A stretch of 64,000 nucleotides of DNA, taken from the IMG/VR virus record IMGVR_UViG_3300046171_000252, positions 1 to 64,000 of that record; one strand, 5' to 3'. How positions within the stretch are numbered: position 1 is the first letter of the stretch; each line of letters starts with the position of its first letter. The notes under the pieces are model-generated. The model worked only from the letters and a program-made list of their open reading frames with translations, was not told the DNA's origin and searched no databases. Shown one piece after another: positions 5,870 through 62,035 of the stretch. A program made the translations under genes and the position numbers.

Positions 5870-5902
5870 TATGCTATAATAAACAAAAGATTGATTATAT
5901 GA
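5840..5902 (+). repeat. 63-bp exact direct repeat, copy 1 (Kelch 3' end, stop, TGnTATAAT, ATG of next gene)
   Basis: Identical to 12029-12091 by direct comparison. Confidence 0.9.
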
Positions 5903-7349: not shown

Positions 7350-10300
7350 TAGAAGAGGAATATTTTCATTACTTGATGTAAGAGAAAGACAGGGTGCCGG
7401 AGTTTGGTCCACGAAAGAAGATGTCTGGAATACTCCGAGTCCTTTTTTGGTGCCACAAGGATTTGCTACTGGATATTTTGCTGGCGGGGCATATACAATT
7501 TCAACAGTAGATCGTATTGATTACTCTAATGACACTGCAACGGCATCGGTAAAAGGACCATTAAGTGTTGGTAGAAATTCTCTAGGAGCAACAGGTAATA
7601 AGGACTTTGGTTACGTTGGTGGTGGTGCGAGTCCTTCTGTAGTATCAACAGTAGACCGCATTGATTATTCTAGTGATACTGGAACAACACCAGCAAAAGG
7701 ACCACTTAGTGATGTTAGAAGACGTCAAGCAGCAACAGGTAATGCTTCCTTCGGTTACTTTGGTGGTGGTACTCCATCATCACAGGTTAGATTAACAACA
7801 GTAGACCGCATTGATTACTCTAATGATACTGCAACGGCATCACCAAAAGGACCATTAAGTTCTGCTAGATCATACCATGCGGCAACAGGTAATTCTTCCT
7901 TTGGATACTTTGCTGGTGGTTCCACTCCAAGTAAAGTAACAACAGTAGACCGTATTGATTATTCTAATGACACGGCAACAGCATCAGTCAAAGGACCATT
8001 AAGTCTTGCTAGAGATACTTCGGGAGCAACAGGTAATGCTGATTTTGGTTACTTTGGTGCTGGTTATGGATCTAGCATATTTTCAACAGTAGATCGTATT
8101 GATTATTCTAATGATACTGCGACAGCAGCAGCAAAAGGACCATTGAGTGCTGTTAAAGCAGCTTTAGGAGCAACTGGTAATAGTTCCTTTGGATACTTTG
8201 GTGGTGGTTATCCTGGTCCTGCATATTCAACAGTAGACCGTATTGATTACTCTAATGACACCGCAACGGCAGTCAGTCAAAGGACCATTAAGTCTTGCTA
8301 GATCATTCATGAAAGCATTAAGTTCCAGAGCTAATGCAATTCCCGCAAAATTATTACAACCGGCACCAACAGTAAGAACGGGTGAGATAGCACCACAAGG
8401 AACTGACTTTGGTTACTTTGGTGGAGGTTATGATGGTTCTACTACCGTATCAACAGTAGACCGTATTGATTATTCTAATGACACTGCAACGACAGTGGCA
8501 AAAGGACCATTAAGTGTTGCTAAAAATGGTATGGGAGCAACAGGTAATGCTCCCTTTGGATATTTTGGTGGTGGTAGTCCTGGACCATTATCATCAGTAG
8601 ACCGTATTGATTACTCTAATGACACTCCAACGGCATCAGCAAAAGGACCATTGAGTGTTGCTAGATATTATTTGGCAGCAACAGGTAATAGTGATTTTGG
8701 TTATTTTGCTGGTGGTGATACGATTATTTCAACAGTAGATCGTGTTGATTATAATAATGACACTGCAACAGCAGCAGTAAAAGGACCATTGAGTACTGCT
8801 AGAGATGAATTAGCAGCAACAGGTAATACTTCTTTCGGTTACTTTGGTGGAGGTGCAACACCTACTGTAGTATCATCAATAGATCGCATTAATTATGCTA
8901 ATGATACTGCTACTGCATCACCAAAAGGACTATTGAGTCAAGGTAGAAAAGATTTAGCAGCAACAGGTAATGCTTCTTTTGGATACTTTGGTGGTGGAGC
9001 TTCTCCTAGTAATGTATCAACAGTAGATCGTATTGATTACTCTAATGATACTGCTACGGCATCACCTAAAGGATCATTGAGTACTGCTAAGTTTTTTCTA
9101 AGTGCAACAGGTGATCAGAACTTTGGTTATTTTGGTGGTGGTCTTAATCCTGCTCTAAGTCCGGCTAGAAAAACAACAGTAGATCGTATTGATTACTCTA
9201 ATGATACTGTAACAGCATCACCTAAAGGTTCATTAAACACTGAAAAAACTGCTTTAGGAGCATCAAGTTCCAGAGCCAATGCAATACCACTCAAAGGACC
9301 TGGTAACTTAGAAGTTCCAGTCTTAATGGGTGCTTTTAGTCGTAATTTGGGACCACAAGGAACTGATTTTGGTTATGTTGGTGGTGGTTATCCCGCAAAA
9401 TCAACAATAGAACGTATTGATTACTCTAGCGATACTTCAACTGCATCAGTAAGAGGACCATTAAGTCTTGCTAGATATTCTTTAGGAGCAACAGGTAATA
9501 GTTCTTTTGGTTACTTTGGTGGTGGATATACTTCTAGTAATGTATCAACAGTAGACCGTATTGATTATTCTAATGACTCTGCAGATGCAGTAGCAAAAGG
9601 ACCATTGACTAGTGCTAAAAGATATATGGGAACAACAGGTACTCAAAGTTTTGGTTACTTTGGTGGTGGTTATGATAATTCTACTCCTGTATTATCAACA
9701 GTAGATCGTATTGATTATAATAATGATACCAATACGGCATCACCAAAAGGACCATTAAGTGTCGCCAGATATGAATTAGCAGCAACAGGTAATCAATCAT
9801 TCGGTTACTTTGCTGGTGGTGGTCCTGGTCCAAAATCAACAGTAGATCGTATTGATTATTCTAATGATACGGCAACGGCAGCAGTCAAAGGACCATTAAG
9901 TGCTGCTAGATGGGTTGTAAGTGCAACGGGAAATGCTTCATTCGGTTACTATGGGGGTGGGGGACAACCTGGTACAAGTTCGAAAGTAGATCGTATTGAT
10001 TACTCTAATGATACTGCAACTTCAATAGAGAAGGGTCCATTAAGTATTGCTAGGGAGAGTATGTCGGCAACAGGTAATCAATCATTTGGTTACTTTGCTG
10101 GAGGATATACTCCGACAATATCAACGATAGATCGTATTGATTATTCTAATGACACTGCCACGGCATCAGTAAGAGGTCCATTAACTGAGGTTAAGGGATA
10201 CACAGCAGCAACAAGTTCCAGAGCCAATGGAATTCCGACTGAAAATATTGTAAATTATGCGGCAGGAACTCTAGGGACTCCTAACACCGGTTACTTTGGT

Positions 10301-12058
10301 GGTGGTGCTTCTCTGAGTAGTATAGATCGTATTGATTATTCCAATGACACTGCAGCGGCAACAGTAAAAGGACCGATGAGTGTTGCTAGATATGGAGGAG
10401 CAGCAATAGGTAATGATTCGTTCGGTTACTTTGGTGGTGGTTCTCCTGGTCCAACATCATCAGTAGATCGTATTGATTACTTAAATGATACTGTAGATGC
10501 ATCACCCAAAGGACCATTGAGTGGCGCATTCCCTTATATCGCAGCAACAGGTAATCAATCGTTTGGATACGTTGGTGGTGGTTATCCTGCAAAATCAACA
10601 GTAGACCGCATTGATTATTCTAATGACACCGTAGCAGCACCAGCAAAAGGACCATTAAGTGTTGCTAGATTTGGTTTAGGAGCAACAGGTAATGCTTCCT
10701 TTGGTTATTTTGGTGGTGGTGGTCCTGGTGAAAAATCAACAGTAGACCGTATTGATTATTCTAATGACACCGCAACAGCATCAGCAAAAGGACCATTGAG
10801 TGCTGGTAGAAGATATTTTTCGGCAACTGGTAATGCTTCCTTTGGTTACTTTGGTGGTGGTGCAGGTGGTCAGACAATAGTAGACCGCATTGATTATTCT
10901 AATGACACCGCAACAGCAGTAGAAAAAATACAATTCAGTGGTGCCAGACAAGAACGAGGAGCAACGGGTAACTCTTCCTTCGGATATTTTGGTGGTGGTC
11001 ATCCTGGTCCAGCAGTATCAATAGTAGATCGTATTGATTATTCTAATGACACTGCAACGTTATCACCTAGAGGACCATTAAGTGTTGCTAGAAGATATTC
11101 TGCAGCAGCAAGTGCCAGAGCCAACGGATTCGTTCCAATCGGTCCAGCAGTGGTTTCTAATGCTGCTGCAATCGCAGGGTCATTTAATCCAACAACCTTT
11201 GGTTACTTTGGTGGTGGTAATACTGGATCTAATGCATCAACAGTAGATCGTATTGATTACTCTAATGATACTGCAACGGCATCAGTCAAAGGACCATTAA
11301 GTCTTGCTAGAAGATACCTAGCAGCAACAGGCAATAGTTTCTTCGGTTACTTTGGTGGTGGTGATCCTGCATTATCAACAGTAGACCGTATTGATTATTC
11401 TAATGACACTGCTACAGCAGCAGCAAAAGGACCATTGAGTAATGGTAGACATTCTTTGGCAGCAACGGGCAATGCTAACTTTGGTTACTTTGGTGGTGGT
11501 TGGGCTCCCAATTCGAGCTCATCAGTAGATCGTATTGATTATTCTAATGACACTCCAACAGCATCAGCAAAAGGACCATTAAGTGCTGCTAGAGATGGTT
11601 TAATAGCAACAGGAAACTTATCATTTGGTTACTTTGGTGGTGGTAGTCCTGGAGTATCAACAGTAGATCGTATTGATTATTCTAATGATACTGCAACGGC
11701 ATCACCAAAAGGACCATTAAGTTTTGGCAGAGATCAATTGGGAGCAACAGGTAATGCAGACTTTGGATATTTTGGTGCTGGTCATCCTGCAAAATCAACA
11801 GTAGATCGTATTGATTATTCTAATGATACTGCAACGGCATCAGTCAAAGGACCATTAAGTGTTGGTAGGCATGCTTTGGCAGCAACAGGTAATTCATCTT
11901 TTGGTTACTTTGGTGGTGGTACTCCTGGTCCAAAATCAACAGTAGATCGTATTGATTACTCAAATGATACTGCTACGGCAGCAGCAAAAGGACCATTAAG
12001 TGTTGCTAGATATGGTTTGGGAGCAACTTCAGCAGCAGCAAATGGACTTCCACAATAG
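7336..12058 (+). CDS. Second giant Kelch-like repeat protein (~1573 aa, 30 blades), split by a +1 frameshift near 8272 (ORFs 7336-8301 and 8243-12058)
   Basis: Same N-terminus (RGIF.L..V.E.Q..G.WS.K.DVWNTPSPF), 5x6 blades, same four linkers and same AAANGLPQ end as 1163-5869; acggcagtcagtcaaagga has one extra base versus the repeat consensus. Confidence 0.85.
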
Positions 12059-12091
12059 TATGCTATAATAAACAAAAGATTGATTATATGA
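12029..12091 (+). repeat. 63-bp exact direct repeat, copy 2
   Basis: Identical to 5840-5902. Confidence 0.9.
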
Positions 12092-32238: not shown

Positions 32239-34709
32239 ATGTCCCAATCACCAGATGAACAGGCAGTTATACCAAAAGAAAAAGTAAAAGTATCCAATCC
32301 CAAAGATCTCGCCCCAGAGGTACTTAGGAGTGCAAATGCAATTAATGATCAAGTAGATGTTGTCAATAAATTAATAAAAGATAATGAAGGAACTGCATAT
32401 CCTCAATGGAGTGATGAACTAAAAGCAGAATATAATAATGAACTCAACAAATTAGCAGAACTAGACGAAGAATTTAAAGAACTTGCATCCGATAATGATT
32501 TTGCTAAGTGTTTGGCAAGGGAAACTATAGGTAAATCATGGAGTCTTCCAGGAGCTCCTGACTGCACAACATTCAGAAAGACTGCGGCATATCAAAAAGC
32601 ACTTAGTCTTTTAAACTCCCCAGTAGATTTACCAGATCCATGTGGGAAAAGTGATCTATCCAAAATTAACACTGCATTATTAAAATTTTTCAATGATCTT
32701 AAAGCAATAAGAAAATTTGGAGACACCTATATTAATAGTTCATTTAATGAAATATACAGGGTTACGAATTTAGTTAGAAATACGGCATCAACAATTGGTG
32801 CTGTATTAAAAGGTATAATGCAGAATCTTCGTAATTGGTTATTGGATAAGATTAGACGAGGTATTCAAGATTTACTTGATCGGTTATTTCCGACTCTTGT
32901 CAAACAATTTAAGAATACAATAATCGGAGAAATCATTGAAAAGGTTTTATGTAAGTTTAAAGATATAATAAAAAATCTTCGCAATCTCGTTGGAGATTTC
33001 TTATTTGAACTTATTGGTAAAGTTGTAAATGCTCCTCTTTGTGCGGTTCAACAATTTACAAATGGATTAATTAACAACGTTGTTGCCAAAGTAGATGAAG
33101 CACTGGGACCAATACTAGATGGCATCAGTAATCTTCTAGGTGGTGTTGGCAAAATTGCAGGATCAGCATTTGAGGCACTTGATTTTATTCTTGGATTTGA
33201 AGCATATCTTTGCCAAAAACCAAATTGCCCTGAAATTAAGTCAACAGTATTGGGACCATGGGCAAACTCCCCCAACAAACCTTTTGGAGATGGGTTTGAT
33301 AATTTTATTAACAATGCCGAAGAAGATTTCTCAGAGGAGGGAATACAAAAATATGTAAATGGATTATCAATTTTTGGTGGCACACTAGGAGACTTGGCAG
33401 ATGCTCCTGCAACAGCATTCCCATGTGATACAAATCCATTCCAATGTGGTCCGCCTAGTGTTGAAATTTTTGGTGGCGGTGGTATTGGTGCCGTTGGAAA
33501 GGCAGTTATTAATGATCTAGGACAAATTTATGGTAGTCAACATAGAAAATGGAGGTTCTGGATATTCAAAACCTCCATTTGTAAGTATTATTGATCCATG
33601 TGATAATGGTAGAGGTGCATCTGGATATGCAGTAATTGATTATGAAACTGGACAAGTTATTGATATTCCAATAATTACTCATGGAAATGGATATCCAAAC
33701 GCACCAACTGGTCGTGATGAATTTGGCAATTCGGTAGATTCAACATCGCCTGGTGTTGGAACTCCTGGTGGTATAACTCCTGGAACTCCTGGTGGTGGAA
33801 CTCCCGGAACTCCCGGAACTCCTGGTGGTGGAACTCCTGGGACTCCTGGTGATGGAATTCCTGGGACTCCTGGGACTCCTGGTGGTGGAACTCCTGGTGG
33901 TATAACTCCTGGTGGTGGAACTCCCGGAACTCCTGGTGATTATAGACTCCTGAGTAGAGGAGTTAATGATTATATTGTTTGTTTAGAAGGATTTGATATT
34001 ATTTCAACAGGACTTGGATATTCTCAATTAGATAAAATGATAATTCACACCAGATCTCCCAATCTAGAGGCATCTGTGAGAATGACAGAGGCAGGTCAAA
34101 TTATAAGTATAACCCTAGCAGAAAGAATTTGTGGTCTCACTGATATTCCAACTATCCTAATAGAGAGTTTGACAGGAGAAGGTGCTAAAATTAAACCAAA
34201 ATTCTCCTTCATCAAAATTACTGACGATATTGAAGAAGAACTGCCACCACAAACAATTCTTCCCATTGATAGAACAACTACTAGCGATGAAAGTATTGCC
34301 GTTCTTGCACAAAGAAATGTTGTTCGTGTAATTGATTGTGTTGGTAATACACCTCCTGTCATTGGATATGTTAATGGTAGACCATATTCTGGTCCGTTCC
34401 ATGTTCATCCATCTACTGGCGTGAAGATGGTTGGTGCCTTCCACATTTCGGGATATCATGATACAATTTATGATACTGCTCAAGAGAGCTTAAATAGAAC
34501 GAAAATCATCTACTCAATATCCCAGCACATCTACTCCTACTTCCACACCATCAACCCCCGCATCATCAACTCCTGCACCATCTCCTGCTCCGAGACCCGC
34601 CCCAAGTCCTTCTCCTTCTCCCTCTCCAAGTCCTTCTCCTTCTCCCTCTCCAAGTCCTTCACCTTCACCACCACCCTCCGGAGGAGGTGGATATGGTGGT
34701 GGATATTAA
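32239..34709 (+). CDS. Baseplate/virion structural protein (~822 aa) with two +1 frameshifts (~33534 and ~34503), GTP repeats and an SP-rich tail
   Basis: ORFs 32239-33594 and 33530-34756 overlap. A third frame gives SSTQYPS...(SP)n...GGGGYGGGY with TAA at 34707-34709; the span of 2471 nt is 823 codons plus 2. Confidence 0.7.
33762..33938 (+). repeat. Coding tandem GTP/GTPG repeat
   Basis: Repeated ggaactcctggt-type units giving GTPGGITPGTPGGGTPGTPGTPG... Confidence 0.85.
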
Positions 34710-48811: not shown

Positions 48812-49039
48812 ATGGACACAATCGAGCAGCATATTGAGGTGGATAAACAGATCCTTGACAATCCTCTAACTTCTCCTAATCAACGTCGTCACATTGAAGG
48901 TGAGCTACATGAATTAGAAGATTATGTAGAGCATCATCAGAAAGAAATTGAAGCAGGTGATCATCATGACCCCACCGCACTTGAACTTTATTGTGATTCT
49001 AACCCATCAGAACCTGAATGTAAAGTTTATGAGGACTGA
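48812..49039 (+). CDS. cp12: CP12 Calvin-cycle inhibitor
   Basis: C-terminal LELYCDSNPSEPECKVYED signature. Confidence 0.92.
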   Translation: MDTIEQHIEVDKQILDNPLTSPNQRRHIEGELHELEDYVEHHQKEIEAGDHHDPTALELYCDSNPSEPECKVYED

Positions 49040-49199
49040 TTGAGACAGTTCAATAAGTGTCACAAGGGGGGTTTCATACCCCCCTTTTTCGTGTATATTA
49101 GATGAGTGGAGGGGAGACCCGACACAACACACCCAGAGGCAACACACATAAGAGCAGAGACAAACTTCTGCCGCCTCTCATCCACCTTCTCTTTCTAGC

Positions 49200-49628
49200 A
49201 TGGCAACTCGCTCACGCATTGGCATTCAACTCTCAGATGACTCTATTCTTTCTGTTTATCATCACTGGGATGGTTATCCTACTTGGTTGGGTCGGATTCT
49301 CAAGACGCACTACAATACAAAGGAGAAAGTAGCAGAACTGATTGATGGTGGCGATATGTCATCTTGCTGGACAAAGGATCGCTGGACTGGTAAGCAAGTT
49401 GCAAAATATGTGATCGAAAATGTTGAGGTTGAGGAATATGGTCCTCAGTATTATTCTGCTCGTGGTGAGAGTTGCCCTCCTCGTCTTGATGATGATATCA
49501 CTGAATTTCTGGACAATGGTGAAGAGTATTCTTACATCTTCACTCGTGCTGATGAGTGGATCTGCTACGATTTGCACGACATCACTGGAAAACTGACTGA
49601 GATTCCAGAAGGAGCACTTGCAGTATGA
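49200..49628 (+). CDS. Conserved phage hypothetical protein (YHHWDGYP family)
   Basis: MATRSRIG..YHHWDGYP..LG. Confidence 0.75.
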   Translation: MATRSRIGIQLSDDSILSVYHHWDGYPTWLGRILKTHYNTKEKVAELIDGGDMSSCWTKDRWTGKQVAKYVIENVEVEEYGPQYYSARGESCPPRLDDDITEFLDNGEEYSYIFTRADEWICYDLHDITGKLTEIPEGALAV

Positions 49629-49960
49629 CATCAATGCTTTTCACTTCCGGACAATCATCACACTCACATCTTGCTCAAAGTGTATTTGAGTTCTTTACAT
49701 CACTCTATGGTGTAAAGAGTGATGTTGAAGTATTTCATACAGATCTTACTGATGACAATGCATTTGGTTTTACTGAAATCAATGGTGATGAGCAATTCAT
49801 TCAGATTCATAATAATTTGAATGAGAAGGATTACATTACCACACTATTGCATGAACTTGTTCATGTTGTTCAGAATGAAAATGGTCAGTTTGATGACACT
49901 CGGAGAGAGGAGGAGGCATATGGGTTAGAGTCTATCCTGTTCAACCAGTTCAGGAAGTGA
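49625..49960 (+). CDS. Putative zincin-like metallopeptidase-fold protein
   Basis: TLLHELVHVVQ (HExxH) followed by EEEAY. Confidence 0.6.
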   Translation: MTSMLFTSGQSSHSHLAQSVFEFFTSLYGVKSDVEVFHTDLTDDNAFGFTEINGDEQFIQIHNNLNEKDYITTLLHELVHVVQNENGQFDDTRREEEAYGLESILFNQFRK

Positions 49961-50024
49961 CACAAGGGGCGTTCCACTGCCTCTCCCCATGCTATAATTA
50001 ATTCATACCAAGGGAAACCACCCC

Positions 50025-50291
50025 ATGCAACTCACCAACTCCGTCTGTATCGTTGATTTCTTCCCTGAGGCATTCATTGCCGAGGCAGATCCTATCACAG
50101 GAATGAAGGTTGTTGTTAAGCGTTTCCAGAAGCGTGTTACTTTCCGTGCTAATGGTCAAAAATCTTATAGCACTGTGACTATGCTCACTGCCAAGAATGA
50201 GTGGGCAGAGCGTATTGCCAACGGTGCAACAGTTACTAACTACAACACCGACAAAATGGATCGTTCCGAGTACACTCCAATGGGTTGCTGA
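50025..50291 (+). CDS. Hypothetical early protein
   Basis: Follows promoter copy 4 and an AGGGA SD. Confidence 0.7.
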   Translation: MQLTNSVCIVDFFPEAFIAEADPITGMKVVVKRFQKRVTFRANGQKSYSTVTMLTAKNEWAERIANGATVTNYNTDKMDRSEYTPMGC

Positions 50292-50293
50292 TT

Positions 50294-50440
50294 ATGTTTA
50301 CTACAGAAGACCATGAGTTTATCGATTTTCTCTTCGGTAAACTCACTTGCCTCACTGATACTGAGATGATTGATTTGCACGATGATGATTCTTGTGATGA
50401 TCATCTTCAATTTGAACAACTTACTCTTCCCGAATCATGA
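50294..50440 (+). CDS. Small acidic hypothetical protein, 48 aa
   Basis: Manually translated. Confidence 0.5.
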   Translation: MFTTEDHEFIDFLFGKLTCLTDTEMIDLHDDDSCDDHLQFEQLTLPES

Positions 50441-50685
50441 ACCCACAATTTACTGGTGTATTTACAACGGTCAAAGAGCATGGTGGAGTCTATGCAGTTT
50501 GTACTGAGGGTGAATTATTTTACTCTCCAATGTATGAAGATGGTAGTGTGAATTTTGAGGAGTTTGAAATTGTAGATTTTTGGGATTCTGAAATTGACCC
50601 AGAGGAACTTGAAAAAATTCAATCTGTATTGATTGATATGATGCAGATTGCTGGTCTTTATTTCAAGTCCATGGTGCCAGTTTAA
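50437..50685 (+). CDS. Hypothetical protein
   Basis: ORF track entry; its last codons (CCA GTT TAA) lie in the 84-bp repeat. Confidence 0.65.
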   Translation: MNPQFTGVFTTVKEHGGVYAVCTEGELFYSPMYEDGSVNFEEFEIVDFWDSEIDPEELEKIQSVLIDMMQIAGLYFKSMVPV

Positions 50686-50760
50686 CTAGTGTCACACGGC
50701 ATGTTGAAACCCCATCAGGATGCCCTATAATACATTCATACAAGGGAAACCACCCATGAC
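50677..50760 (+). repeat. 84-bp exact direct repeat, left copy (stop codon, promoter, SD, ATG)
   Basis: Identical to 53888-53971 by direct comparison. Confidence 0.92.
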
Positions 50761-50938
50761 CACCTTTGACTTTGATACAGAATATTACTGGGGTGCTCTC
50801 ATGGTCAAACTGGTTCCCTTGTTTGCCATGGATGTTTACAAAGCATCCGATGATGAGTTGGTATGGGTTTTTGATGTGAACAACCCTGATAATGGGTATC
50901 ATGTTCCTGCTCGCAATCTTTCCACCTATTCTTATTGA
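50756..50938 (+). CDS. Hypothetical protein, 60 aa
   Basis: ATG 50756 and SD lie inside the repeat. Confidence 0.65.
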   Translation: MTTFDFDTEYYWGALMVKLVPLFAMDVYKASDDELVWVFDVNNPDNGYHVPARNLSTYSY

Positions 50939-51237
50939 TTATGTACTCCATCGAAATTATTGAAGAGTTTATCCGCAATCAAATTGCAAAGCCAACTGCC
51001 GATCCTACCATTTTCCGTAGTTGGTATAAGTATGCTAATGCCTCTGGTGAGTGGAATTTAACTAAAGGACATGCACCTGGATTTTGTCGTCTTGCAAAAA
51101 TTGCAGGCAAAAATATCAACGAAGAGTTTGGGTTTGATGTAATCAAGATGCACTTCTATGGTATCTGGAAAAACAATGAGATTAATAATCCCGAATTTAT
51201 GATTTGGGAAAAAGATCACGACTTCACACTGGTTTGA
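50935..51237 (+). CDS. Hypothetical protein
   Basis: ORF track entry; overlaps the previous stop. Confidence 0.65.
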   Translation: MIMYSIEIIEEFIRNQIAKPTADPTIFRSWYKYANASGEWNLTKGHAPGFCRLAKIAGKNINEEFGFDVIKMHFYGIWKNNEINNPEFMIWEKDHDFTLV

Positions 51238-51239
51238 TT

Positions 51240-51920
51240 ATGTCTGACAATCGCCCTACACTTGCAGAAGGATTTGCAAATGCCAAACAATATGAGGGAA
51301 AGAAAGTGGTTGATGTTCTGAGTAACATTACTAGACGCAATAAGGGTTCTGTTGGTAGCGAATTTGAGAAGAAGATTGGTATTCCTAAGTCTTCTGAAAG
51401 ATGTGATTACATTGATAGTGGTGATTGTAAGACTCTAAAATTCAAAAACAACAAACCCGCAGAATGTTGTGATATTATTATGCTTCAAGAGATTCTCCAT
51501 GAAGCGATGAACAACATCTCATTCTATGATAGTGCTGTATATGAAAAGATTCAACAAGTTCATTTTGCACCTATTAACAAGGATGGTGATATTGACGAGT
51601 GGACATTTGGTGAGAACTTTGTAATTTCTAAAGACACTAATCCTGCACTTTACAATCAAATGGAGAAGGATTACAATCATATCACTGAACGTATTCGCAC
51701 TCTAGTTAATTCTGGTCAGTATATTAGTGCTAGTGATGTGAATCAACGTTCGGCAGTTAAAATCCTTGAGATTCGTCCCAAGGGTGCAGGTGGTGGTTCA
51801 AGTAGAAACACTTGGAATGGTGTTGTTATCACCAAACCAGATGCACAATCTGCTTATTCTTATTACTTTAAGCAATCTGGTGTCAAGTACATCTACAACA
51901 ACCGATTGACAAATAATTAA
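51240..51920 (+). CDS. MutH/Sau3AI-family PD-(D/E)XK endonuclease
   Basis: NKGSVGSEFEKKIG..DY..GDCKTLK matches the MutH KG.G..E..D..E-x-K layout; LEIRPKGA motif; SYYFKQS. Confidence 0.65.
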   Translation: MSDNRPTLAEGFANAKQYEGKKVVDVLSNITRRNKGSVGSEFEKKIGIPKSSERCDYIDSGDCKTLKFKNNKPAECCDIIMLQEILHEAMNNISFYDSAVYEKIQQVHFAPINKDGDIDEWTFGENFVISKDTNPALYNQMEKDYNHITERIRTLVNSGQYISASDVNQRSAVKILEIRPKGAGGGSSRNTWNGVVITKPDAQSAYSYYFKQSGVKYIYNNRLTNN

Positions 51921-51934
51921 AAACCTGCTACACT
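51906..51934 (+). promoter_or_regulatory. Sigma70-type promoter TTGACA-N17-TACACT with extended TG
   Basis: Consensus -35 and correct spacing; upstream of the 52008 ORF and methylase. Confidence 0.7.
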
Positions 51935-52007
51935 GAATACATCGACAGAATACTCAACCATTACCGAGTTCTGTTATTCCTAACCATTATCCGGAAGCAT
52001 TACCACT

Positions 52008-53390
52008 ATGAAAACTATTTCATTCACAAAACAAAAAACTTGGAAAGAGAAAGTAGTTGACCAAGTTGTCAACACAGAGAAAAAATCTTTCAATACCAAA
52101 ATAAAAATTTTTGGAGAACTTCTTGTTCGTAAGGGAAATCGTTGGGTAAAGAGTACCGACCCAGTTACGATGCAAAGAGATTCTTCAAAGAGAGCAAAAA
52201 CTGATATTGTTGATGCTTATTATTTCAAAAAGAATCCAAACACAGATCGATGTCGTGGATATGATCATACTGCATCAAATATGGGAAATACTCTCATAGT
52301 TACTACCAAAGACATTGTTGATACTTTTGGTGAAAAAATTCCTGCCTTTAGTATCCTTCAACTTAACGGAAATACCAACCTTGTTGCTCAGTGTCAACTT
52401 CTCAATGGTGATATTACTATTCCTAATGATTATCAACTGAGTGATTTCATTGCATCAAAAGATGAAGAATTAGATTTTAATGTAATAGTCATTAGCAATC
52501 AAGCAGATTATAATTTTTACTATAAAATTGTTGACAATACTGTTAGTGCTAAATCAAAAGATGACAACTATTCTTCTTGCTTAGTTGGTCATAAACTTCT
52601 CAATTATGAAACTGGAGAAACAGATCTCATTACTTGGGTAACAAGAGCAATGGATCGACCTCTTTCATATTTGAATCTTAGTGCTGTTCCCAAAGATATT
52701 CCTGAGATGAATAAAATCTTCTCAGAATATAAGGGAGTAATTGTTAATGTAAGAGAAGAAACATCACCCATTGTCAACAATGGTGGCAGCAATCAATCTG
52801 TCTGGAAAGCATTTTGTTTAGACCTTTCTAAACTTGAACTTTCTGGAAAACTTTCTCCTCTTCAACTTTCTTCAGTCCTTGACAATCTAGGAAAAGAAAT
52901 TACCCAAGCATCTGACAAAAATGTTGAAGAATATTGGAACAATAAATTCTTTGGCATTAAGAAGAAACGAGGTTCTTCAATGATTGACACTAAACTTACA
53001 AATTTCAATAAATTTGTTTGTTCTCCAAAGTCTTCATGGACTCAACTAAGTTTTACTATTGAAGACTGGATTCTTTGGGAATTGTTTAGTGTAACTCGTG
53101 ATGATATTCGGGATGCACAAGATCATCGTCTTTATGGTCACGGCGGTGGTGACATTCTTGGTGGAAAAGATAGAACTGACGTTGCACATCAATCACTCAA
53201 CTTTTTAAGAACAATGTTGTTGTATGCTAATCACATTAACTTCGAAAGTCGTTTTACTGCTATTAAAGCATTTGAGTGGGCAGAAGAGAACATTTGCACG
53301 AAATTTGCAGCGGTTGACCAAGTTGATCGTCTTGACATTCTTGCAGATAAAAAAGTAAAATTAGCACTAAAGTCTCACATTTATTCATGA
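52008..53390 (+). CDS. Hypothetical protein, 460 aa
   Basis: Long ORF coupled (ATGA) to the methylase; no family recognised. Confidence 0.8.
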   Translation: MKTISFTKQKTWKEKVVDQVVNTEKKSFNTKIKIFGELLVRKGNRWVKSTDPVTMQRDSSKRAKTDIVDAYYFKKNPNTDRCRGYDHTASNMGNTLIVTTKDIVDTFGEKIPAFSILQLNGNTNLVAQCQLLNGDITIPNDYQLSDFIASKDEELDFNVIVISNQADYNFYYKIVDNTVSAKSKDDNYSSCLVGHKLLNYETGETDLITWVTRAMDRPLSYLNLSAVPKDIPEMNKIFSEYKGVIVNVREETSPIVNNGGSNQSVWKAFCLDLSKLELSGKLSPLQLSSVLDNLGKEITQASDKNVEEYWNNKFFGIKKKRGSSMIDTKLTNFNKFVCSPKSSWTQLSFTIEDWILWELFSVTRDDIRDAQDHRLYGHGGGDILGGKDRTDVAHQSLNFLRTMLLYANHINFESRFTAIKAFEWAEENICTKFAAVDQVDRLDILADKKVKLALKSHIYS

Positions 53391-53896
53391 CATCATCCAC
53401 ACTCAAAGTATTAACAGCAAGCACAGGTAATCGTAAAGACACATGGAACACTCCCCCCGAATTTGTGGGGGATGTTGTTAAGTTCTTCGGTGGTAGGATT
53501 GGATTAGACCCGTGCTCTAATAGTATGGATGAACCTAATGTTCCTGCCGACAAAGTTTATACTGAAGAAATGGATGGACTTCAACAAAGTTGGGTTGCTG
53601 ATAGTGTTTTCATGAATCATCCATATTCTGCTAGTAAAAAATGGATTCCCCATGCTGCTGCCCAATACGAAAATGGAAATGCGAAAGAAATGGTTCTTCT
53701 CATTAAGTTGGACGTTTCTACCAAATGGTGGAGATCTATTGAGAAATATCCATGGATAGGAGTCAATAGACGGTTAAGATTCGGTGCTGCCAAAAGTGCA
53801 GCACCATTTCAGTCTGCTATCATATACCTTGGGACTGATCTTGACCGATTTAAGAACACTTTTGGTAAGTATGGAACCCTTTATGCACCAGTTTAA
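53387..53896 (+). CDS. Phage DNA N6-adenine methyltransferase (Dam-like, PF05869 type)
   Basis: DTWNTPP, LDPCS, DGLQQSW, VFMNHPY (motif IV variant), TKWW. Confidence 0.85.
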   Translation: MTSSTLKVLTASTGNRKDTWNTPPEFVGDVVKFFGGRIGLDPCSNSMDEPNVPADKVYTEEMDGLQQSWVADSVFMNHPYSASKKWIPHAAAQYENGNAKEMVLLIKLDVSTKWWRSIEKYPWIGVNRRLRFGAAKSAAPFQSAIIYLGTDLDRFKNTFGKYGTLYAPV

Positions 53897-53971
53897 CTAG
53901 TGTCACACGGCATGTTGAAACCCCATCAGGATGCCCTATAATACATTCATACAAGGGAAACCACCCATGAC
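53888..53971 (+). repeat. 84-bp exact direct repeat, right copy
   Basis: Identical to 50677-50760. Confidence 0.92.
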
Positions 53972-54353
53972 TGCCACCTTCACCGACTACGTTGCTCAAC
54001 AGGATGCACGTAACACCATTCAGTTGAATGTCACTAAGTATGCTCTCATGCTTTGTGATGCACTGCAACAGTCTTATCAACGTCAGTATCCAAATGGTCG
54101 CAACTATTCTTATGCACTGATCTCCGGTCGTAAGTATCACAAAGTGATGCAGTGTGTAGATGGTCAAACTGAATCAGTTCATGCCTTCATTGATAAGAAA
54201 ACTGGTGAAGTATACAAACCAGCATCCGTCAAGGCACCGGCAAAAGGTGTTCGTTTCAATCTACTAATCATCGAAGAACGTGAGTTTGTGTTGGAGAACT
54301 GTGATTGGGCAGGTGGTTATCTCTACCGCAATGCATACTATCAAGGTGCATGA
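53967..54353 (+). CDS. Conserved phage hypothetical protein
   Basis: GRKYHKV..VHAFIDKKTGEVYKPAS.KAPAKGVRFNL. Confidence 0.75.
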   Translation: MTATFTDYVAQQDARNTIQLNVTKYALMLCDALQQSYQRQYPNGRNYSYALISGRKYHKVMQCVDGQTESVHAFIDKKTGEVYKPASVKAPAKGVRFNLLIIEEREFVLENCDWAGGYLYRNAYYQGA

Positions 54354-54490
54354 TAGAATTTAATGAAGAACAATACTGCCTCATTATAGAGGCAGTAGAG
54401 GATTACGCTATGTTAGTTGATGAAGAAACCTCCTTCAAATGTGAGGAGATTAACTCTATTATTCAGGCACATCTTGATGAATTACACTAA
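54350..54490 (+). CDS. Small hypothetical protein
   Basis: ATGA-coupled ORF. Confidence 0.55.
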   Translation: MIEFNEEQYCLIIEAVEDYAMLVDEETSFKCEEINSIIQAHLDELH

Positions 54491-54677
54491 AGCACAATTG
54501 GTTGATGCACTTGTGGCAGAGTGGGACTATCTTTGTCATGATGATTATGACCCAGAAGATCCAACACCAGAAGAATATCGCAAAGAGATGGAAGAACTCA
54601 CAATCGAAGAATTGATTGAAGAAACATCAACTGGCGAAGGTTACACTCTTGACGAATTTATGGAGAATTACGGATGA
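54477..54677 (+). CDS. Small acidic hypothetical protein
   Basis: ORF track entry, internal ATG chosen. Confidence 0.6.
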   Translation: MNYTKAQLVDALVAEWDYLCHDDYDPEDPTPEEYRKEMEELTIEELIEETSTGEGYTLDEFMENYG

Positions 54678-55735: not shown

Positions 55736-56386
55736 GTGAATCCATATAAAAAGGTATTATTCCCGATACACATCTTCCAGGCTCATATCAAAGAGAATGA
55801 GTTAATTAAGGAGGAATTGTCTCATGCGATTGAGAACTATCGTGATAAGGGAGATTCAAAAGTACCCGAAGGATGGTTGACTGATAATCTACTGACATCA
55901 TTTGATGCAGATAATTTTAACTTCAAACTCTTTTCCGAGAGTCAAGTGACACAGAGATTATATGAAAAATATATTCTTAAGTTCTTTGATAGACCGACAA
56001 AGGTCAATGTACTCGAAATGTGGTTTAATTATTATAGTAATGGTGAGTATCAAGAAGTGCATACACATGTGCAACCTGATATGTTTGCACCACGCCCACA
56101 TTTCTCATGTATTCATTACTTAAAGTTTGATCCTGAGGTACATCAACCAGTGGTATTCAATGACCCAATCGGAATACTAAGGCAAACCAATTCAATTGAA
56201 CTGGACTCTAATAACTATAATGATAAGTATGAACCACAATTAAGGGAGGGTAGTATTATTATGTTCCCTCCATACTTAGAGCACTATGTACCAAAATCAG
56301 AACCAACACCGAACAATCCAAGAATTAGTGTGGCATTTAATATTATCCTGACAGAATATGGAGAGGACAAATTGTATGGACCTTAA
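55736..56386 (+). CDS. Putative 2OG-Fe(II) oxygenase (PF13759/TIGR02466-like)
   Basis: WFNYY..GEYQEVHTH, FSCIHYL, EGSIIMFPPYLEHYV, RISVAFN. Confidence 0.8.
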   Translation: MNPYKKVLFPIHIFQAHIKENELIKEELSHAIENYRDKGDSKVPEGWLTDNLLTSFDADNFNFKLFSESQVTQRLYEKYILKFFDRPTKVNVLEMWFNYYSNGEYQEVHTHVQPDMFAPRPHFSCIHYLKFDPEVHQPVVFNDPIGILRQTNSIELDSNNYNDKYEPQLREGSIIMFPPYLEHYVPKSEPTPNNPRISVAFNIILTEYGEDKLYGP

Positions 56387-56855
56387 TTATATCGATCAGT
56401 TCTTTTCTGAGGAAGAGCATCAGGTTATTCATGAGTATTGTATGAGTGCAGAGTATTCATATGGTGAGAGAGATGATATGAATTTACCGGTGACGGGTAT
56501 GATTCATAATATACCAGAGACAGAGTTTGTATATAAACTGATTAAAAAGAAGTTAAAAGATTCATCAGAGCAAGTGCAGGGTAAGAAACTTTACCGAATG
56601 TATGTGAATTGTTTTGTACCATGTGAGCGTCCATATTTTCATACCGATGGAGAGGAAGGAATTACATTCATCTATTATCCGAATATGGGATGGGACAAAG
56701 ATGATGGAGGAGAGACACAATTTCTAATGAATGATGAAATGTATGGTGTGCTACCAATACCGAATCGTATGGTCGTGTTTAGTGCGAATCTATTACATCG
56801 TGCCACAACATTTAGAAATGACCACCGATTCACCGTCGCAATTAAATATATGTGA
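56379..56855 (+). CDS. 2OG-Fe(II) oxygenase
   Basis: YFHTD (HxD), GGETQF, NRMVVF..LLHRA, RFTVA. Confidence 0.8.
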   Translation, partial: DLNYIDQFFSEEEHQVIHEYCMSAEYSYGERDDMNLPVTGMIHNIPETEFVYKLIKKKLKDSSEQVQGKKLYRMYVNCFVPCERPYFHTDGEEGITFIYYPNMGWDKDDGGETQFLMNDEMYGVLPIPNRMVVFSANLLHRATTFRNDHRFTVAIKYM

Positions 56856-60254: not shown

Positions 60255-60403
60255 TGTGTCAGTTTGTAGATTGGCACACTTAAACTAGTGTCTTGTGGCA
60301 ATCGAACTAGTGTCACACGGTTTTGGCACAGACCTGAAAATCGTGTATTGTTATTTTTGTGGGTCGAAAATGTTACCTACTTCCCCACAAATTCTTTTCA
60401 CAA

Positions 60404-60622
60404 ATGAACAACACAATTCTCGTAATTCTTCACACTTTGAACATTCTGGCATTCGTGATAGAAATTGCCACAGAATCTGCAGTTCGTGTCATCGCACTTG
60501 CAATTGTCCTGGGTGAGTATACCTGGACCGGCGCACAAGTTCTTTACAACAATCGTCGTGAAATCCTGGAGAACATTAACATTTTTCGTGAGACCGTTGG
60601 ATCTTACTTTGTGTATGCATGA
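60404..60622 (+). CDS. Hypothetical protein
   Basis: Follows promoter copy 7. Confidence 0.6.
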   Translation: MNNTILVILHTLNILAFVIEIATESAVRVIALAIVLGEYTWTGAQVLYNNRREILENINIFRETVGSYFVYA

Positions 60623-60717
60623 TAAGTAACACCATGTGCCAAAAGTACTAGTGGCACAGTAAATGAGCACAGACCCCAAAATCGTGTATTGTAGTTAAGT
60701 CATCAGGAATTCACCAA

Positions 60718-60957
60718 ATGCAAGGTTACAACGGTTGGGCAAATTGGGAGACCTGGAATGTTGCTCTCTGGATCGGAAATGATCCTGGTTTGTATGAACT
60801 GGCATGTGAAACTGCAAGGGATGGTGGAACTTATGGTCATCTGGTGAGTATGATTCACGATTGTGGAAGTAAAGAAACACCAGACGGATGTAAGTGGGAC
60901 GATATAAAGATAGACGGAATACGGATAAATGAAATGATGAAAGAACTTGTAGACTAA
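60718..60957 (+). CDS. Conserved phage hypothetical protein (YNGW.NWETW family)
   Basis: YNGWANWETWNVALWIGND; follows promoter copy 8. Confidence 0.75.
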   Translation: MQGYNGWANWETWNVALWIGNDPGLYELACETARDGGTYGHLVSMIHDCGSKETPDGCKWDDIKIDGIRINEMMKELVD

Positions 60958-60999
60958 GTAACCCTTACTCAACTCACACTAACTAACACTTTTTTTCAA

Positions 61000-61149
61000 A
61001 TGGATTACGACACTTTCGACACTGACATTTTCTCTGAGATTAATGACATGCCCGGAGAGATTTATGATGTGATTGAATACAAGGAAGAATATGAAGATGA
61101 TAAGAAGTTTGATGTAGAAAAATATATTGAAGGAAATACAGACTACTAA
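61000..61149 (+). CDS. Small acidic hypothetical protein, 49 aa
   Basis: Manually translated. Confidence 0.5.
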   Translation: MDYDTFDTDIFSEINDMPGEIYDVIEYKEEYEDDKKFDVEKYIEGNTDY

Positions 61150-61185
61150 GTAACACTCACTCATTCACCCCTATTTGATACTACC

Positions 61186-61341
61186 ATGACCGAACTTGAA
61201 ATGCAAGCAATTGAAGTCCTTGAAATCGTTGAGGATTCAGTAGAATACATTTGTGGCGAACATGTTATCAGTGGAGAAAAGGTCTGGACTATGGTAGCAG
61301 CACTTGCCGATGCCAAACTTGCACAATTCCCTGATAATTGA
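61186..61341 (+). CDS. Small hypothetical protein, 51 aa
   Basis: Manually translated. Confidence 0.55.
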   Translation: MTELEMQAIEVLEIVEDSVEYICGEHVISGEKVWTMVAALADAKLAQFPDN

Positions 61342-61455
61342 GAGACTAAGTAACACAAACCATTCGGCCGCCCGTGGACGGTTGAGTTAGTGTCACACGA
61401 TTTTGGCACTACCCTCAAAACCGTGTATTGTAGAAGGGTGAAAGAAATCAACCAA

Positions 61456-61671
61456 ATGCAGACCTACACCGACCCTTGCACCTATGCCATGCAAAGTGAC
61501 ATGCGCCAACTGAAAGAGATGATCGCATCAGACCTTGCAAACTACATGCTGGAAATGATGCCACCACTTGACATGTGCGTCGATTGGGTATGTGATCGTT
61601 TTGCACTGAATGCAACCGACGAACTGATTGATTTCGTTGCTGATTGTCATGATGAGTTCTTCGGTAACTGA
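61456..61671 (+). CDS. Hypothetical protein
   Basis: Follows promoter copy 9. Confidence 0.6.
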   Translation: MQTYTDPCTYAMQSDMRQLKEMIASDLANYMLEMMPPLDMCVDWVCDRFALNATDELIDFVADCHDEFFGN

Positions 61672-62035
61672 TACAAACCTATGAAATTTACCATCGTTAA
61701 GTTCAAAGGTCGTTGGGTCAAAGTATCCAACAAACTATCACCCCCGACTGAATGGGTTACAGTCATCAACAAAGCAAACCTTAAGTAACACAAACTCATG
61801 CGTATTTGTCTTTCTGCCATTGTGATTTTGTTGGGTGCCAATCTTCTCATCGATTTGTTAGATTCTGATATGGTACAAATCATGCAAGAGCGTAACGAAA
61901 CAATCCAGCGCAGCATAGACCGCATGTGACAGTCGGACTAGTGCCACACGGTTTCGTTTTGGACCTTAAAACCGTGTATTGTATAGAAGTGGAGGGGACA
62001 ACGCCCGCCACACGCTCTAAACCTCTTCTCTTCTC

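What the first reader, a model, noticed from the sequence alone, without database searches (positions are those of the whole stretch)
50677..53971. 3.2-kb nuclease-methylase cassette bounded by identical 84-bp promoter repeats
Seen: exact repeats 3,211 bp apart enclose five ORFs (two small ORFs, a MutH/Sau3AI-like nuclease, a 460-aa orphan, a Dam-like methylase). Each repeat supplies the last two codons and stop of the upstream gene (both end Pro-Val-stop), then promoter, SD and ATG-AC of the downstream gene, so gain or loss is seamless. Inference: a recently acquired, excisable module moving by recombination at the promoter element with no integrase. A toxic nuclease with a protective methylase could make it addictive.
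Basis: partly seen in the sequence, partly recalled or inferred. Interest (0 to 1): 0.8.

Follow-up and report, generated by a model that had tools for sequence, protein, structure and literature searches.

The report
Promoter-bounded nuclease–methylase cassette in cyanophage
A marine T4-like cyanophage carries a 3.2-kb nuclease-plus-methylase gene cassette sitting between two identical copies of an early-promoter element, and close relatives show the same site empty or holding a different nuclease, so this is a clean natural example in a cyanophage of the promoter-mediated gene shuffling already known from T4-type coliphages.

Summary
Exact 84-nt direct repeats (50677-50760 and 53888-53971) bracket five genes. 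Each repeat holds the upstream stop codon, a near-consensus sigma-70 promoter, an SD and the next ATG.

The window is the first 64 kb of a 207.6-kb S-SKS1-like cyanomyovirus contig. Close relatives show three alleles with breakpoints exactly at the element:
- empty site with one element (four contigs);
- short cassette: ORF60, PD-(D/E)XK nuclease, Dam;
- long cassette (this window).

An empty and a short-cassette contig are 99.7% identical in their flanks. The element belongs to a dispersed promoter plus stem-loop family (8 copies at 49-62 kb). Two neighbouring copies are also indel sites that hold other nuclease/methylase pairs in relatives.

This matches PeSL-mediated modular shuffling (Arbiol 2010; Comeau 2014). 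I found no report of it in cyanomyoviruses.

ORF226 has a MutH/Sau3AI fold with the catalytic D..D-x-K motif. It is always linked to an adenine methylase, and is fused to one in phage S-8S29. ORF460 is not an orphan: it is a small, isolated family with a confident fold that matches nothing solved, and it is coupled to methylases.

Circles, GATC specificity and direction of change are untested. "Addiction" is unlikely.

The parts
50437..50685 (+). Upstream flanking gene (82 aa, unknown function). Its last two codons and its stop lie inside the left repeat.
   Evidence: ORF list. Homologues at 90-96% identity lie directly upstream of the single element in the empty-site relatives.
50677..50760 (+). 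Left copy of the 84-nt promoter element. It holds the stop codon, the upstream box ACTAGTGTCACACGG, a weak hairpin over the -35 box, TTGAAA-16-TATAAT, an SD and ATGAC.
50756..50938 (+). ORF60 (phrog_12800, unknown function). It is the first gene of both the long and the short cassette and often precedes the MutH-like gene in other contigs.
50941..51237 (+). ORF98 (unknown function). It is 73% identical to the 100-aa gene that accompanies the MutH-like nuclease in L114.
51240..51920 (+). ORF226, a MutH/Sau3AI-fold endonuclease with putative catalytic residues D56, D62 and K64.
   Evidence: NCBIfam MutH E 2.5e-6 and PADLOC REase_II E 1.6e-8. The only significant Foldseek hits are MutH (2aor, 2azo, 1azo) and Sau3AI (4pxg). 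Alignment to E. coli MutH. The three residues are invariant in the family.
52008..53390 (+). ORF460, a conserved protein of unknown function with a confident predicted fold that has no solved relative. Its stop overlaps the Dam start (ATGA).
53387..53896 (+). Dam-type N6-adenine DNA methyltransferase (PF05869). Motif IV reads NHPY. Its last two codons and its stop lie inside the right repeat.
53888..53971 (+). Right copy of the 84-nt promoter element, identical to the left copy. It drives the DUF7717 gene.
53967..54353 (+). Downstream flanking gene (128 aa, DUF7717).
   Evidence: Pfam PF24835, E 1.8e-55. It lies directly after the single element in the empty-site relatives.
49036..49135 (+). 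Related element copy after the CP12 gene ('slot 1', empty here). It contains a G6/C6 hairpin followed by a T-run. In L005 this site holds a 1,385-nt insertion with a putative REase and a PF01555 methylase.
49946..50030 (+). Weaker related element copy ('slot 2', empty here). In L005 this site holds a 1,798-nt REase + MTase pair. In L008 and L010 it holds a 1,620-nt insertion with a 375-aa methylase.
60290..62018 (+). Four further copies of the same promoter-element family (60290-60387, 60630-60728, 61370-61466, 61920-62018), each upstream of small ORFs.
   Evidence: (family D13).

Best explanation
The window is the hyperplastic early region of an S-SKS1-like T4-type cyanomyovirus. In this region, genes are organised as cassettes separated by copies of a composite regulatory element of about 95 nt. 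Each copy holds the upstream stop codon, a conserved palindromic box, a stem-loop over the -35 box and spacer, a sigma-70 promoter, an SD and an ATG.

The 3.2-kb block is one such cassette. It was inserted or lost by homologous recombination between element copies, using the phage's own T4-type recombination machinery. This is the PeSL 'modular shuffling' mechanism. The recombination leaves every gene intact and every downstream gene with a promoter.

Shown here:
- the element's anatomy;
- its dispersed family;
- three natural alleles with breakpoints at the element;
- a near-isogenic empty/filled pair;
- the same behaviour at two neighbouring slots.

Inferred:
- that the recombination is homologous rather than site-specific;
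- that a circular intermediate exists;
- that the change in this genome is recent. The evidence is 0/84 differences between the two copies, against about 5/84 to the orthologous copy in relatives.

The cargo most likely works as a phage-borne restriction-modification-like pair. An early-expressed MutH/Sau3AI-fold endonuclease would cut or nick unmethylated GATC-type sites in host DNA or in co-infecting phages. The Dam-type methylase would protect the phage's own roughly 3 GATC sites per kb. ORF460, ORF98 and ORF60 are conserved accessory partners of unknown role. I put the recombination part at about 0.85 and the R-M-like function at about 0.5.
For: Structure:
- Exact repeats and promoter.

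Element family:
- nhmmer finds 8 copies, all between 49 and 62 kb, and none in 1-49 kb.
- Alignments A1 and A6.
- Hairpins between the upstream box and the -10 are significant in most copies, with z from -2.7 to -5.8 and three different stem sequences.

Alleles:
- L005, L006, L007 and L008 have one element joining the two flanks, with exactly 3,211 nt less.
- L009 and L010 have ORF60, a PF20472 PD-(D/E)XK nuclease and Dam between two element copies.
- L008 and L010 are 99.67-99.79% identical over 7.5 kb of flanks.
- The neighbouring slots behave the same way.
- In run X3 a relative's flanks are at 112-136x while the cassette is at 7.9x. The cassette is identical in four runs from four studies.

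Function:
- MutH/Sau3AI fold with the catalytic triad aligned and invariant.
- Nuclease-methylase linkage is kept while the methylase family changes between PF05869 and PF02086.
- Phage S-8S29 has a D12 methylase fused to a MutH-like domain: hhalign probability 95%, E 2e-8.
- The window has 192 GATC sites in 64 kb.

Literature:
- PeSL definition and model.
Against: - No circle or deletion joint could be seen. Only k=31 contigs were available and they break at the 84-nt repeat.
- The direction of change (gain or loss) is not resolved. The chimeric pattern of the L008/L010 elements fits either.
- The stem-loop in the two cassette-flanking copies is degraded (z = -0.8 to -1.4).
- The AT-rich tract of enterobacterial PeSLs is replaced by a conserved box.
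- ORF226 scores far below the curated MutH thresholds (26.8 bits against 243). MutH itself is a latent nickase that needs MutL.
- GATC specificity and methyl-sensitivity are inferred from family membership only.
- The methylase's motif IV is the unusual NHPY.
- ORF460 + methylase pairs exist without any MutH-like gene, so the nuclease may not be the methylase's essential partner.
Confidence: 0.7

Rival explanations
1. Site-specific rather than homologous recombination. The conserved palindromic box (TGTGNCA-N10-TGNCACA) at the left end of every element would be a recombination site for a phage or host recombinase, which would make the region an integron-like cassette array.
For: - The box is the most conserved part of the family and is palindromic, with one position that co-varies between copies.
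- In the L008/L010 pair the crossover maps to the extreme left edge of the element, next to the box.
- In slots 1 and 2 the left and right copies share little beyond the box and the -10 region, which gives poor substrates for homologous exchange.
- Arbiol and Comeau left this option open.
Against: - No recombinase gene lies in or next to the cassettes.
- The 84-nt identity extends far beyond the box, to the ATG, as expected from homologous exchange or gene conversion.
- T4-type phages recombine short homologies efficiently (established knowledge of the UvsX/UvsY system).
Confidence: 0.1
2. The cassette is ancestral at this site, and the empty sites are repeated deletions. On this view it is not a recent acquisition. 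The identity of the two repeats is maintained by gene conversion.
For: - Deletion between direct repeats is mechanistically the easier step.
- The short and long cassettes share ORF60 and Dam at their ends, which suggests an older resident cassette whose middle was swapped.
- The L008 element looks like an L010 left flank joined to the L010 right copy.
Against: - Only 2 of 80 DUF7717-bearing viral contigs carry a cassette here.
- S-SKS1 and more distant relatives have other arrangements.
- Related cassettes sit at other genomic sites, for example after CP12 in L125-128, in L118 and in L108, so insertion events must occur.
Confidence: 0.25
3. The cargo is not an R-M-like pair. The Dam is an orphan anti-restriction methylase, which is the usual reading for cyanophage Dam. 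The MutH-like protein then acts separately, either as a homing-type or selfish nuclease or as a nickase serving phage recombination, replication or repair.
For: - Cyanophage Dam is commonly interpreted as counter-defence (PMC12801897). PADLOC's best models for it are 'orphan methyltransferase'.
- ORF460 + methylase pairs occur without the nuclease.
- MutH is a nickase, not a restriction enzyme (PMC3848065).
- Free-standing homing nucleases are typical of T4-type hyperplastic regions (established knowledge).
Against: - Every ORF226 homologue context examined has an adenine methylase one or two genes downstream, even when the methylase family differs.
- A nuclease-methylase fusion exists in S-8S29.
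- The alternative allele also pairs a nuclease, of a different fold, with the same Dam.
- The neighbouring slots hold REase + MTase pairs.
Confidence: 0.25
4. Assembly artefact. The repeat identity or the placement of the cassette results from a mis-join through a repeated promoter in a metagenome assembly.
For: In a de Bruijn graph, flank-repeat-cassette-repeat-flank cannot be told apart from an empty site plus a separate circle. Logan contigs break at the repeat.
Against: - The flank, cassette and flank depths are equal (5.9, 5.6, 5.95) and the repeat is at 12.6 in the source run.
- An independent JGI assembly from another sample spans the 82-aa gene, the element and ORF60 through to Dam (L130).
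- Two independent contigs span both junctions of the short allele, which has the same end genes.
Confidence: 0.03

Closest known systems
PeSLs (promoter-early stem-loops) and PeSL-mediated modular shuffling in T4-type phages: phi1/RB49, T4/PST and KVP40/nt-1 (Arbiol et al. 2010, PMC2839356; Comeau et al. 2014, PMC4122927)
   Same: - A composite intergenic element of about 100 nt that holds the upstream stop codon, a sigma-70 early promoter, a stem-loop, an SD and the start codon.
- Many copies concentrated in hyperplastic regions upstream of ORFans.
- Indels and replacements between closely related phages bounded by the elements.
- No dedicated recombinase.
   Different: - The host is a marine Synechococcus-type cyanobacterium, and the element has its own sequence.
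- A conserved palindromic box replaces the AT-rich tract upstream of the -35.
- The stem-loop is degraded in the two copies flanking this cassette.
- The cargo is a multi-gene nuclease/methylase module rather than single ORFans.
- Mini-circles are not demonstrated here.
- The one cyanophage paper that considered PeSLs (S-PM2, PMC4503421) judged them unlikely to be responsible there.
Virus-encoded type II R-M systems of chloroviruses, for example R.CviAI/M.CviAI (GATC) of PBCV-1 (PMC7248222)
   Same: A lytic virus of a phototroph carries an early-expressed adenine methylase of Dam type next to a site-specific nuclease. The viral genome retains many GATC sites and must be methylated.
   Different: - The proteins are unrelated and the host is eukaryotic.
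- The specificity and activity of the cyanophage pair are untested.
- Here the pairs sit in exchangeable promoter-bounded slots.
MutH / Sau3AI family of GATC endonucleases (PDB 2aor, 2azo, 4pxg)
   Same: The predicted fold matches only these structures (E 4e-6 to 5e-4, TM about 0.6). The D-x6-(D/E)-x-K catalytic motif and the 'IRPK' segment align.
   Different: - About 16-20% identity.
- Far below the curated MutH HMM cut-offs, so it is not an orthologue.
- Single domain like MutH, not two-domain like Sau3AI.
- Encoded by a phage and linked to a methylase rather than to mutS/mutL.
Mobile gene cassettes proposed in cyanomyoviruses (Sullivan et al. 2010, PMC3037559)
   Same: Groups of accessory genes are found at variable positions in hypervariable regions of T4-like cyanophages.
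   Different: Those cassettes were proposed to move through tRNA sites, homing endonucleases or a plasmid-stability gene. Promoter-element boundaries were not described.

Membership tests
PeSL (promoter-early stem-loop) regulatory cassette | Strong sigma-70-like -35/-10 promoter | tested here: met
   TTGAAA-16-TATAAT, 11 of 12 consensus positions, in both copies. Promoter activity itself was not assayed.
PeSL (promoter-early stem-loop) regulatory cassette | Stable stem-loop within or overlapping the promoter | tested here: inconclusive
   Most family copies have a significant hairpin between the upstream box and the -10: w49036 z -3.75, S-SKS1 copy -3.27, L005 single copy -2.74, L011 copies -5.84 and -3.23. 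The two cassette-flanking copies have only a 5+4-bp interrupted stem (z -0.83 and -1.41).
PeSL (promoter-early stem-loop) regulatory cassette | [quoted passage not shown] | tested here: not met
   That position is occupied by a conserved, GC-balanced palindromic box, TGTGNCAGT..ACTAGTGTCACACGG.
PeSL (promoter-early stem-loop) regulatory cassette | The element spans the upstream stop codon to the SD and start codon of the downstream gene (about 100 bp) | tested here: met
   Direct reading of 50677-50760 and 53888-53971.
PeSL (promoter-early stem-loop) regulatory cassette | Many copies, concentrated in hyperplastic regions upstream of ORFans | tested here: met
   8 nhmmer hits, all at 49-62 kb of the 64-kb window, each upstream of small or unknown ORFs.
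PeSL (promoter-early stem-loop) regulatory cassette | Indels and replacements between closely related phages are bounded by the elements | tested here: met
   Three slots and three alleles at this slot, including a pair with 99.7% identical flanks.
PeSL (promoter-early stem-loop) regulatory cassette | Formation of mini-circles by exchange between flanking elements | not testable with these tools
   All available runs are held only as k=31 contigs that end at the repeat, and no joints were recoverable.
MutH/Sau3AI endonuclease family (ORF226) | MutH-type fold | tested here: met
   AF2 model with pLDDT 70.9 and pTM 0.71. The only Foldseek PDB hits with E<1e-3 are MutH and Sau3AI.
MutH/Sau3AI endonuclease family (ORF226) | Catalytic D-(x)n-(D/E)-x-K residues | tested here: met
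   D56, D62 and K64 align with E. coli MutH D70, E77 and K79 (the residue roles come from established knowledge). They are invariant in 21 homologues. The S-8S29 homologue has D..E-L-K.
MutH/Sau3AI endonuclease family (ORF226) | Passes the curated family HMM thresholds | tested here: not met
   NCBIfam MutH gives 26.8 bits against a cut-off of 243. There is no Pfam hit. It is a distant relative, not a MutH orthologue.
MutH/Sau3AI endonuclease family (ORF226) | GATC recognition and sensitivity to adenine methylation | not testable with these tools
   This needs a biochemical assay.
Type II restriction-modification system (cargo) | Nuclease and methylase genes linked, with the linkage conserved across genomes | tested here: met
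   All contexts examined keep an adenine methylase 1-2 genes downstream of the nuclease. There is one fusion protein.
Type II restriction-modification system (cargo) | Nuclease and methylase share one recognition sequence, and methylation blocks cleavage | not testable with these tools
   Inferred only from the families involved (Dam-type methylases; MutH/Sau3AI nucleases).
Phage Dam N6-adenine methyltransferase (PF05869) | Passes Pfam's gathering threshold and has an intact catalytic motif IV | tested here: inconclusive
   65.6 bits against 28.1. Motif IV reads N-H-P-Y instead of (D/N)-P-P-Y, but it is invariant in six homologues at 69-86% identity.

The most novel reading that the evidence does not exclude
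The early hyperplastic region of this cyanomyovirus lineage is an integron-like array of at least three consecutive promoter-bounded slots. The slots specialise in exchanging alternative nuclease + methylase (R-M-like) modules, which the phages use offensively to destroy unmethylated host DNA or competing co-infecting phages. The conserved palindromic box would serve as the exchange or regulatory site. ORF460 would be a new class of methylase-coupled effector with a fold not seen in solved structures.
Probability: 0.2. Interest if true: 0.75.

Novelty: new member of a known kind. Interest (0 to 1): 0.5.

Why it matters
It provides a clean, population-level example of how T4-like cyanophages gain and lose accessory genes. 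There are three alleles and one near-isogenic pair. These phages are among the most abundant viruses in the ocean.

The mechanism shown here is promoter-element recombination, with no integrase, tRNA site or homing nuclease needed. Until now it was documented only for phages of enterobacteria and vibrios, and it was considered unlikely in the one cyanophage examined.

It also shows that what is usually annotated as an 'orphan' cyanophage Dam can be part of swappable nuclease-methylase modules. That suggests phage-borne restriction as a weapon against host DNA or rival phages.

Finally, it flags testable unknowns: ORF460, the MutH-like nuclease, and a Dam::MutH-like fusion in a cultured phage.

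Tried and rejected
- Profile searches of the ORF226 and ORF460 families against PDB sequences gave nothing useful. The only hit was a marginal cyanovirin match, E 0.06.
- Pfam scans of ORF60, ORF98, ORF226 and ORF460 were empty.
- The ESM Atlas gave only chance-level named hits for ORF460.
- A deep HMM search of 1.84 billion representatives found no remote relatives of ORF460.
- hhalign of ORF460 against the roughly 330-aa DGQH-motif 'middle' protein of other cassettes found no relationship.
- Laying contigs of four runs gave no 3,211-nt skip or back-joint. I regard this as uninformative rather than negative.
- GC content does not mark the cassette as foreign. It is 31-41% against 39-43% for the flanks, but other parts of the window are equally AT-rich.
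- GATC under-representation (O/E 0.62) is the same in relatives with and without the cassette, so it does not discriminate.
- S-SKS1 first looked like an empty site. It has a different gene between the element and DUF7717, and the 82-aa gene lies elsewhere.
- I considered 'addiction' and rejected it as the main force, for the reasons given in the interpretation verdict.

Full report
**1. Observation.** The repeat finder reports an exact 84-nt direct repeat at 50677-50760 and 53888-53971, spaced 3,211 nt apart. A 33-nt core of it occurs only at these two places, against 0 expected in shuffles. Reading the sequence, each copy starts with CCA GTT TAA, the Pro-Val-stop of the upstream gene. It then carries the box AACTAGTGTCACACGG, TTGAAA-16-TATAAT (11 of 12 consensus positions), a GGGAAA SD-like stretch and ATGAC of the next gene. 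Between the copies lie five + strand ORFs of 60, 98, 226, 460 and 169 aa.

**2. What genome this is.** The window equals the first 64 kb of IMG/VR contig IMGVR_UViG_3300046171_000252, which is 207,616 bp long. Its nearest deposited relatives are T4-like Synechococcus myoviruses. The closest is S-SKS1 (208 kb), with patchy 72-91% nucleotide identity.

**3. The repeat is one member of a regulatory-element family.** The upstream box recurs in the window 6 times, against 0.2 expected. An nhmmer profile finds 8 copies, all between 49 and 62 kb. The copies share this order:
- the end of the upstream gene;
- TGTGNCAGT-N-ACTAGTGNCACA;
- a hairpin;
- the -10 box;
- an SD and ATG (alignments A1 and A6).

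The hairpin has three different sequences in three sub-families. It is significant in most copies, with z from -2.7 to -5.8, and one copy is a G6/C6 stem followed by a T-run. It is degraded in the two copies flanking the cassette, with z -0.8 to -1.4.

**4. Relatives show the predicted empty site, and more.** I searched IMG/VR with the two flanking proteins and compared the loci by blastn. Three alleles appear.
- **Empty site.** L005, L006, L007 and L008 are 91-97% identical to the window. They have a single element joining the 82-aa gene to DUF7717, which is exactly 3,211 nt less than the window.
- **Short cassette.** L009 and L010 have element, ORF60, a 140-aa gene, Dam, element. The 140-aa gene passes Pfam's threshold for a PD-(D/E)XK nuclease: PF20472, 31.6 bits against 23.7.
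- **Long cassette.** This is the window.

L008 (empty) and L010 (short cassette) are 99.67-99.79% identical over 7.5 kb of flanks. They form a near-isogenic gain/loss pair like phi1/RB49.

The window's two copies differ at 0 of 84 positions. The orthologous single copy in L005 differs from them at about 5 positions, and the two copies in L010 differ from each other at 2. That fits a recent event or gene conversion.

Among 80 DUF7717-bearing viral contigs, 2 carry a cassette here, 4 are empty, and the rest have other neighbours.

**5. Neighbouring slots behave the same way.**
- **Slot 1.** The element after CP12 (49036-49135) is a single copy in the window. In L005 it is split by a 1,385-nt insertion that encodes a weak REase_II-like protein and a PF01555 methylase.
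- **Slot 2.** The element at 49946-50030 is split in L005 by a 1,798-nt insertion that encodes phrog 'restriction endonuclease II' (E 2e-130) and a methyltransferase (E 1e-199). In L008 and L010 it is split by a 1,620-nt insertion with a 375-aa methylase.

In each case the window's single element is a hybrid of the relatives' left and right copies.

**6. Not an artefact.** In the source run the 84-nt repeat is its own unitig at depth 12.6, against 5.9 for the flanks and 5.6 for the cassette. The cassette is present with zero differences in three further runs from other studies. In run X3 a diverged relative's flanks are at 112-136x while the cassette is at 7.9x. An independent JGI assembly (L130) spans the 82-aa gene, the element and ORF60 through to Dam. 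No circle or deletion joints were seen, but all runs are stored as k=31 contigs that end at the repeat, so this test was uninformative.

**7. Cargo: the methylase.** The 169-aa protein is a PF05869 Dam-type methylase. It has an invariant NHPY at motif IV. Its conserved C-terminal Y-V/A-P-V codons coincide with the element's TGTGNCAGT box, which explains why both upstream genes end in Pro-Val-stop.

**8. Cargo: the nuclease.** ORF226 gives weak HMM matches to MutH (E 2.5e-6, far below the cut-off) and to a PADLOC type II REase model (E 1.6e-8). Its AF2 model (pLDDT 70.9) matches only MutH and Sau3AI in the PDB, with E from 4e-6 to 5e-4. Aligned to authentic E. coli MutH, its D56, D62 and K64 fall on MutH D70, E77 and K79. 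All three are invariant in the family.

In every context examined, ORF226 homologues are followed after one variable gene by an adenine methylase. The methylase is either PF05869 or the unrelated-in-sequence PF02086 D12 class. The cultured phage S-8S29 encodes a D12 methylase fused to a MutH-like domain with D..E-L-K: hhalign probability 95%, E 2e-8. The window has 192 GATC sites, so a GATC nuclease would require self-protection.

**9. Cargo: ORF460 and the small ORFs.** ORF460 has 74 homologues. It belongs to a small, isolated family with 17 representatives in 1.84 billion clusters. It has no match in 50,697 phage records. Its model is confident (pLDDT 88) yet has no PDB match. There are only low-TM matches to uncharacterised cyanophage proteins and faint GmrSD-N/DndB-like hints. 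It is translationally coupled to the methylase here. In L125-128 it is coupled to a D12 methylase with no MutH-like gene present. ORF98 is 73% identical to the small partner of the nuclease in L114. The function of ORF60 is unknown (phrog_12800).

**10. Comparison with what is known.** The anatomy and behaviour match PeSLs and PeSL-mediated modular shuffling in T4-type phages (PMC2839356 and PMC4122927). The exceptions are a conserved box in place of the AT-rich tract, a degraded stem-loop in these two copies, and mini-circles that remain untested. In the searched literature PeSLs are mentioned for cyanophages only to be judged unlikely in S-PM2 (PMC4503421). Cyanophage cassettes have been ascribed to other mobilisers (PMC3037559). 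Cyanophage Dam is usually read as an orphan counter-defence enzyme (PMC12801897). The closest functional analogue of a virus-borne GATC R-M pair is chlorovirus CviAI (PMC7248222).

**11. Verdict.** 'Addiction' is unlikely, because excision removes both genes together and empty alleles predominate. I file this as a new member of a known kind, of moderate interest. The R-M-like cargo, the multi-slot pattern, ORF460 and the S-8S29 fusion are the parts most worth following up.

Noticed in passing
window 1256-12072: A very large array of more than 50 diverged repeat units of about 138-147 nt (about 48 aa, with a recurring FGYFGGG-type motif). It is probably one or two giant repeat-containing structural or fibre proteins.
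   Followed up: no
window 33734-33958 and 34570-34677: Collagen-like (G-T-P-G-G) short tandem repeats, and a Pro/Ser-rich 12-nt-period repeat, inside large + strand ORFs.
   Followed up: no
window 49036-49135 and 49946-50030; L005:1516-2901 and 3788-5586; L010:3959-5579: Two further promoter-element 'slots' are empty in the window. In close relatives they hold other nuclease/methylase or methylase-only cassettes, so the region looks like a hotspot for DNA-modification modules.
   Followed up: partly
window 52008-53390; L125:6001-8207: The ORF460 family has a confident predicted fold with no solved relative and very few relatives in 1.84 billion protein clusters. It is translationally coupled to Dam-type methylases of two different families, sometimes without any MutH-like gene.
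   Followed up: partly
L133:1538-3013 (Synechococcus phage S-8S29, OQ504979.1): A 492-aa protein annotated 'DNA adenine methylase' is a fusion of a D12-class methylase with a C-terminal MutH-like nuclease domain carrying D..E-L-K. This is a single-chain R-M-like enzyme in a cultured cyanophage.
   Followed up: partly
window 50684-50699, 53895-53910, 60305-60320, 61385-61400, 61936-61951, 49052-49067: A conserved palindromic box (TGTGNCA-N10-TGNCACA) lies upstream of the -35 in every element copy, with one co-varying position. It could be an operator or activator site, an attenuator stem or a recombination site. It remains unexplained.
   Followed up: partly
window 48812-49039, 49625-49960, 55736-56855: Accessory genes around the cassette: CP12 (an auxiliary metabolic gene), an IrrE/Peptidase_M78-like 111-aa protein, and two adjacent 2OG-Fe(II) oxygenase genes.
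   Followed up: no
window 54354-54477: A 123-nt segment containing a terminator-like palindrome (54374-54397) is absent from L008 and L010. L005 has a 383-nt insertion at 54667-54670. These indels do not lie at recognised element copies.
   Followed up: no
L109:878-1876, L111:5786-6772: In other cassettes the gene between the MutH-like nuclease and Dam is a roughly 330-aa protein with an invariant DGQH motif. It gives weak ParB-like and DUF6551 matches and is unrelated to ORF460.
   Followed up: partly
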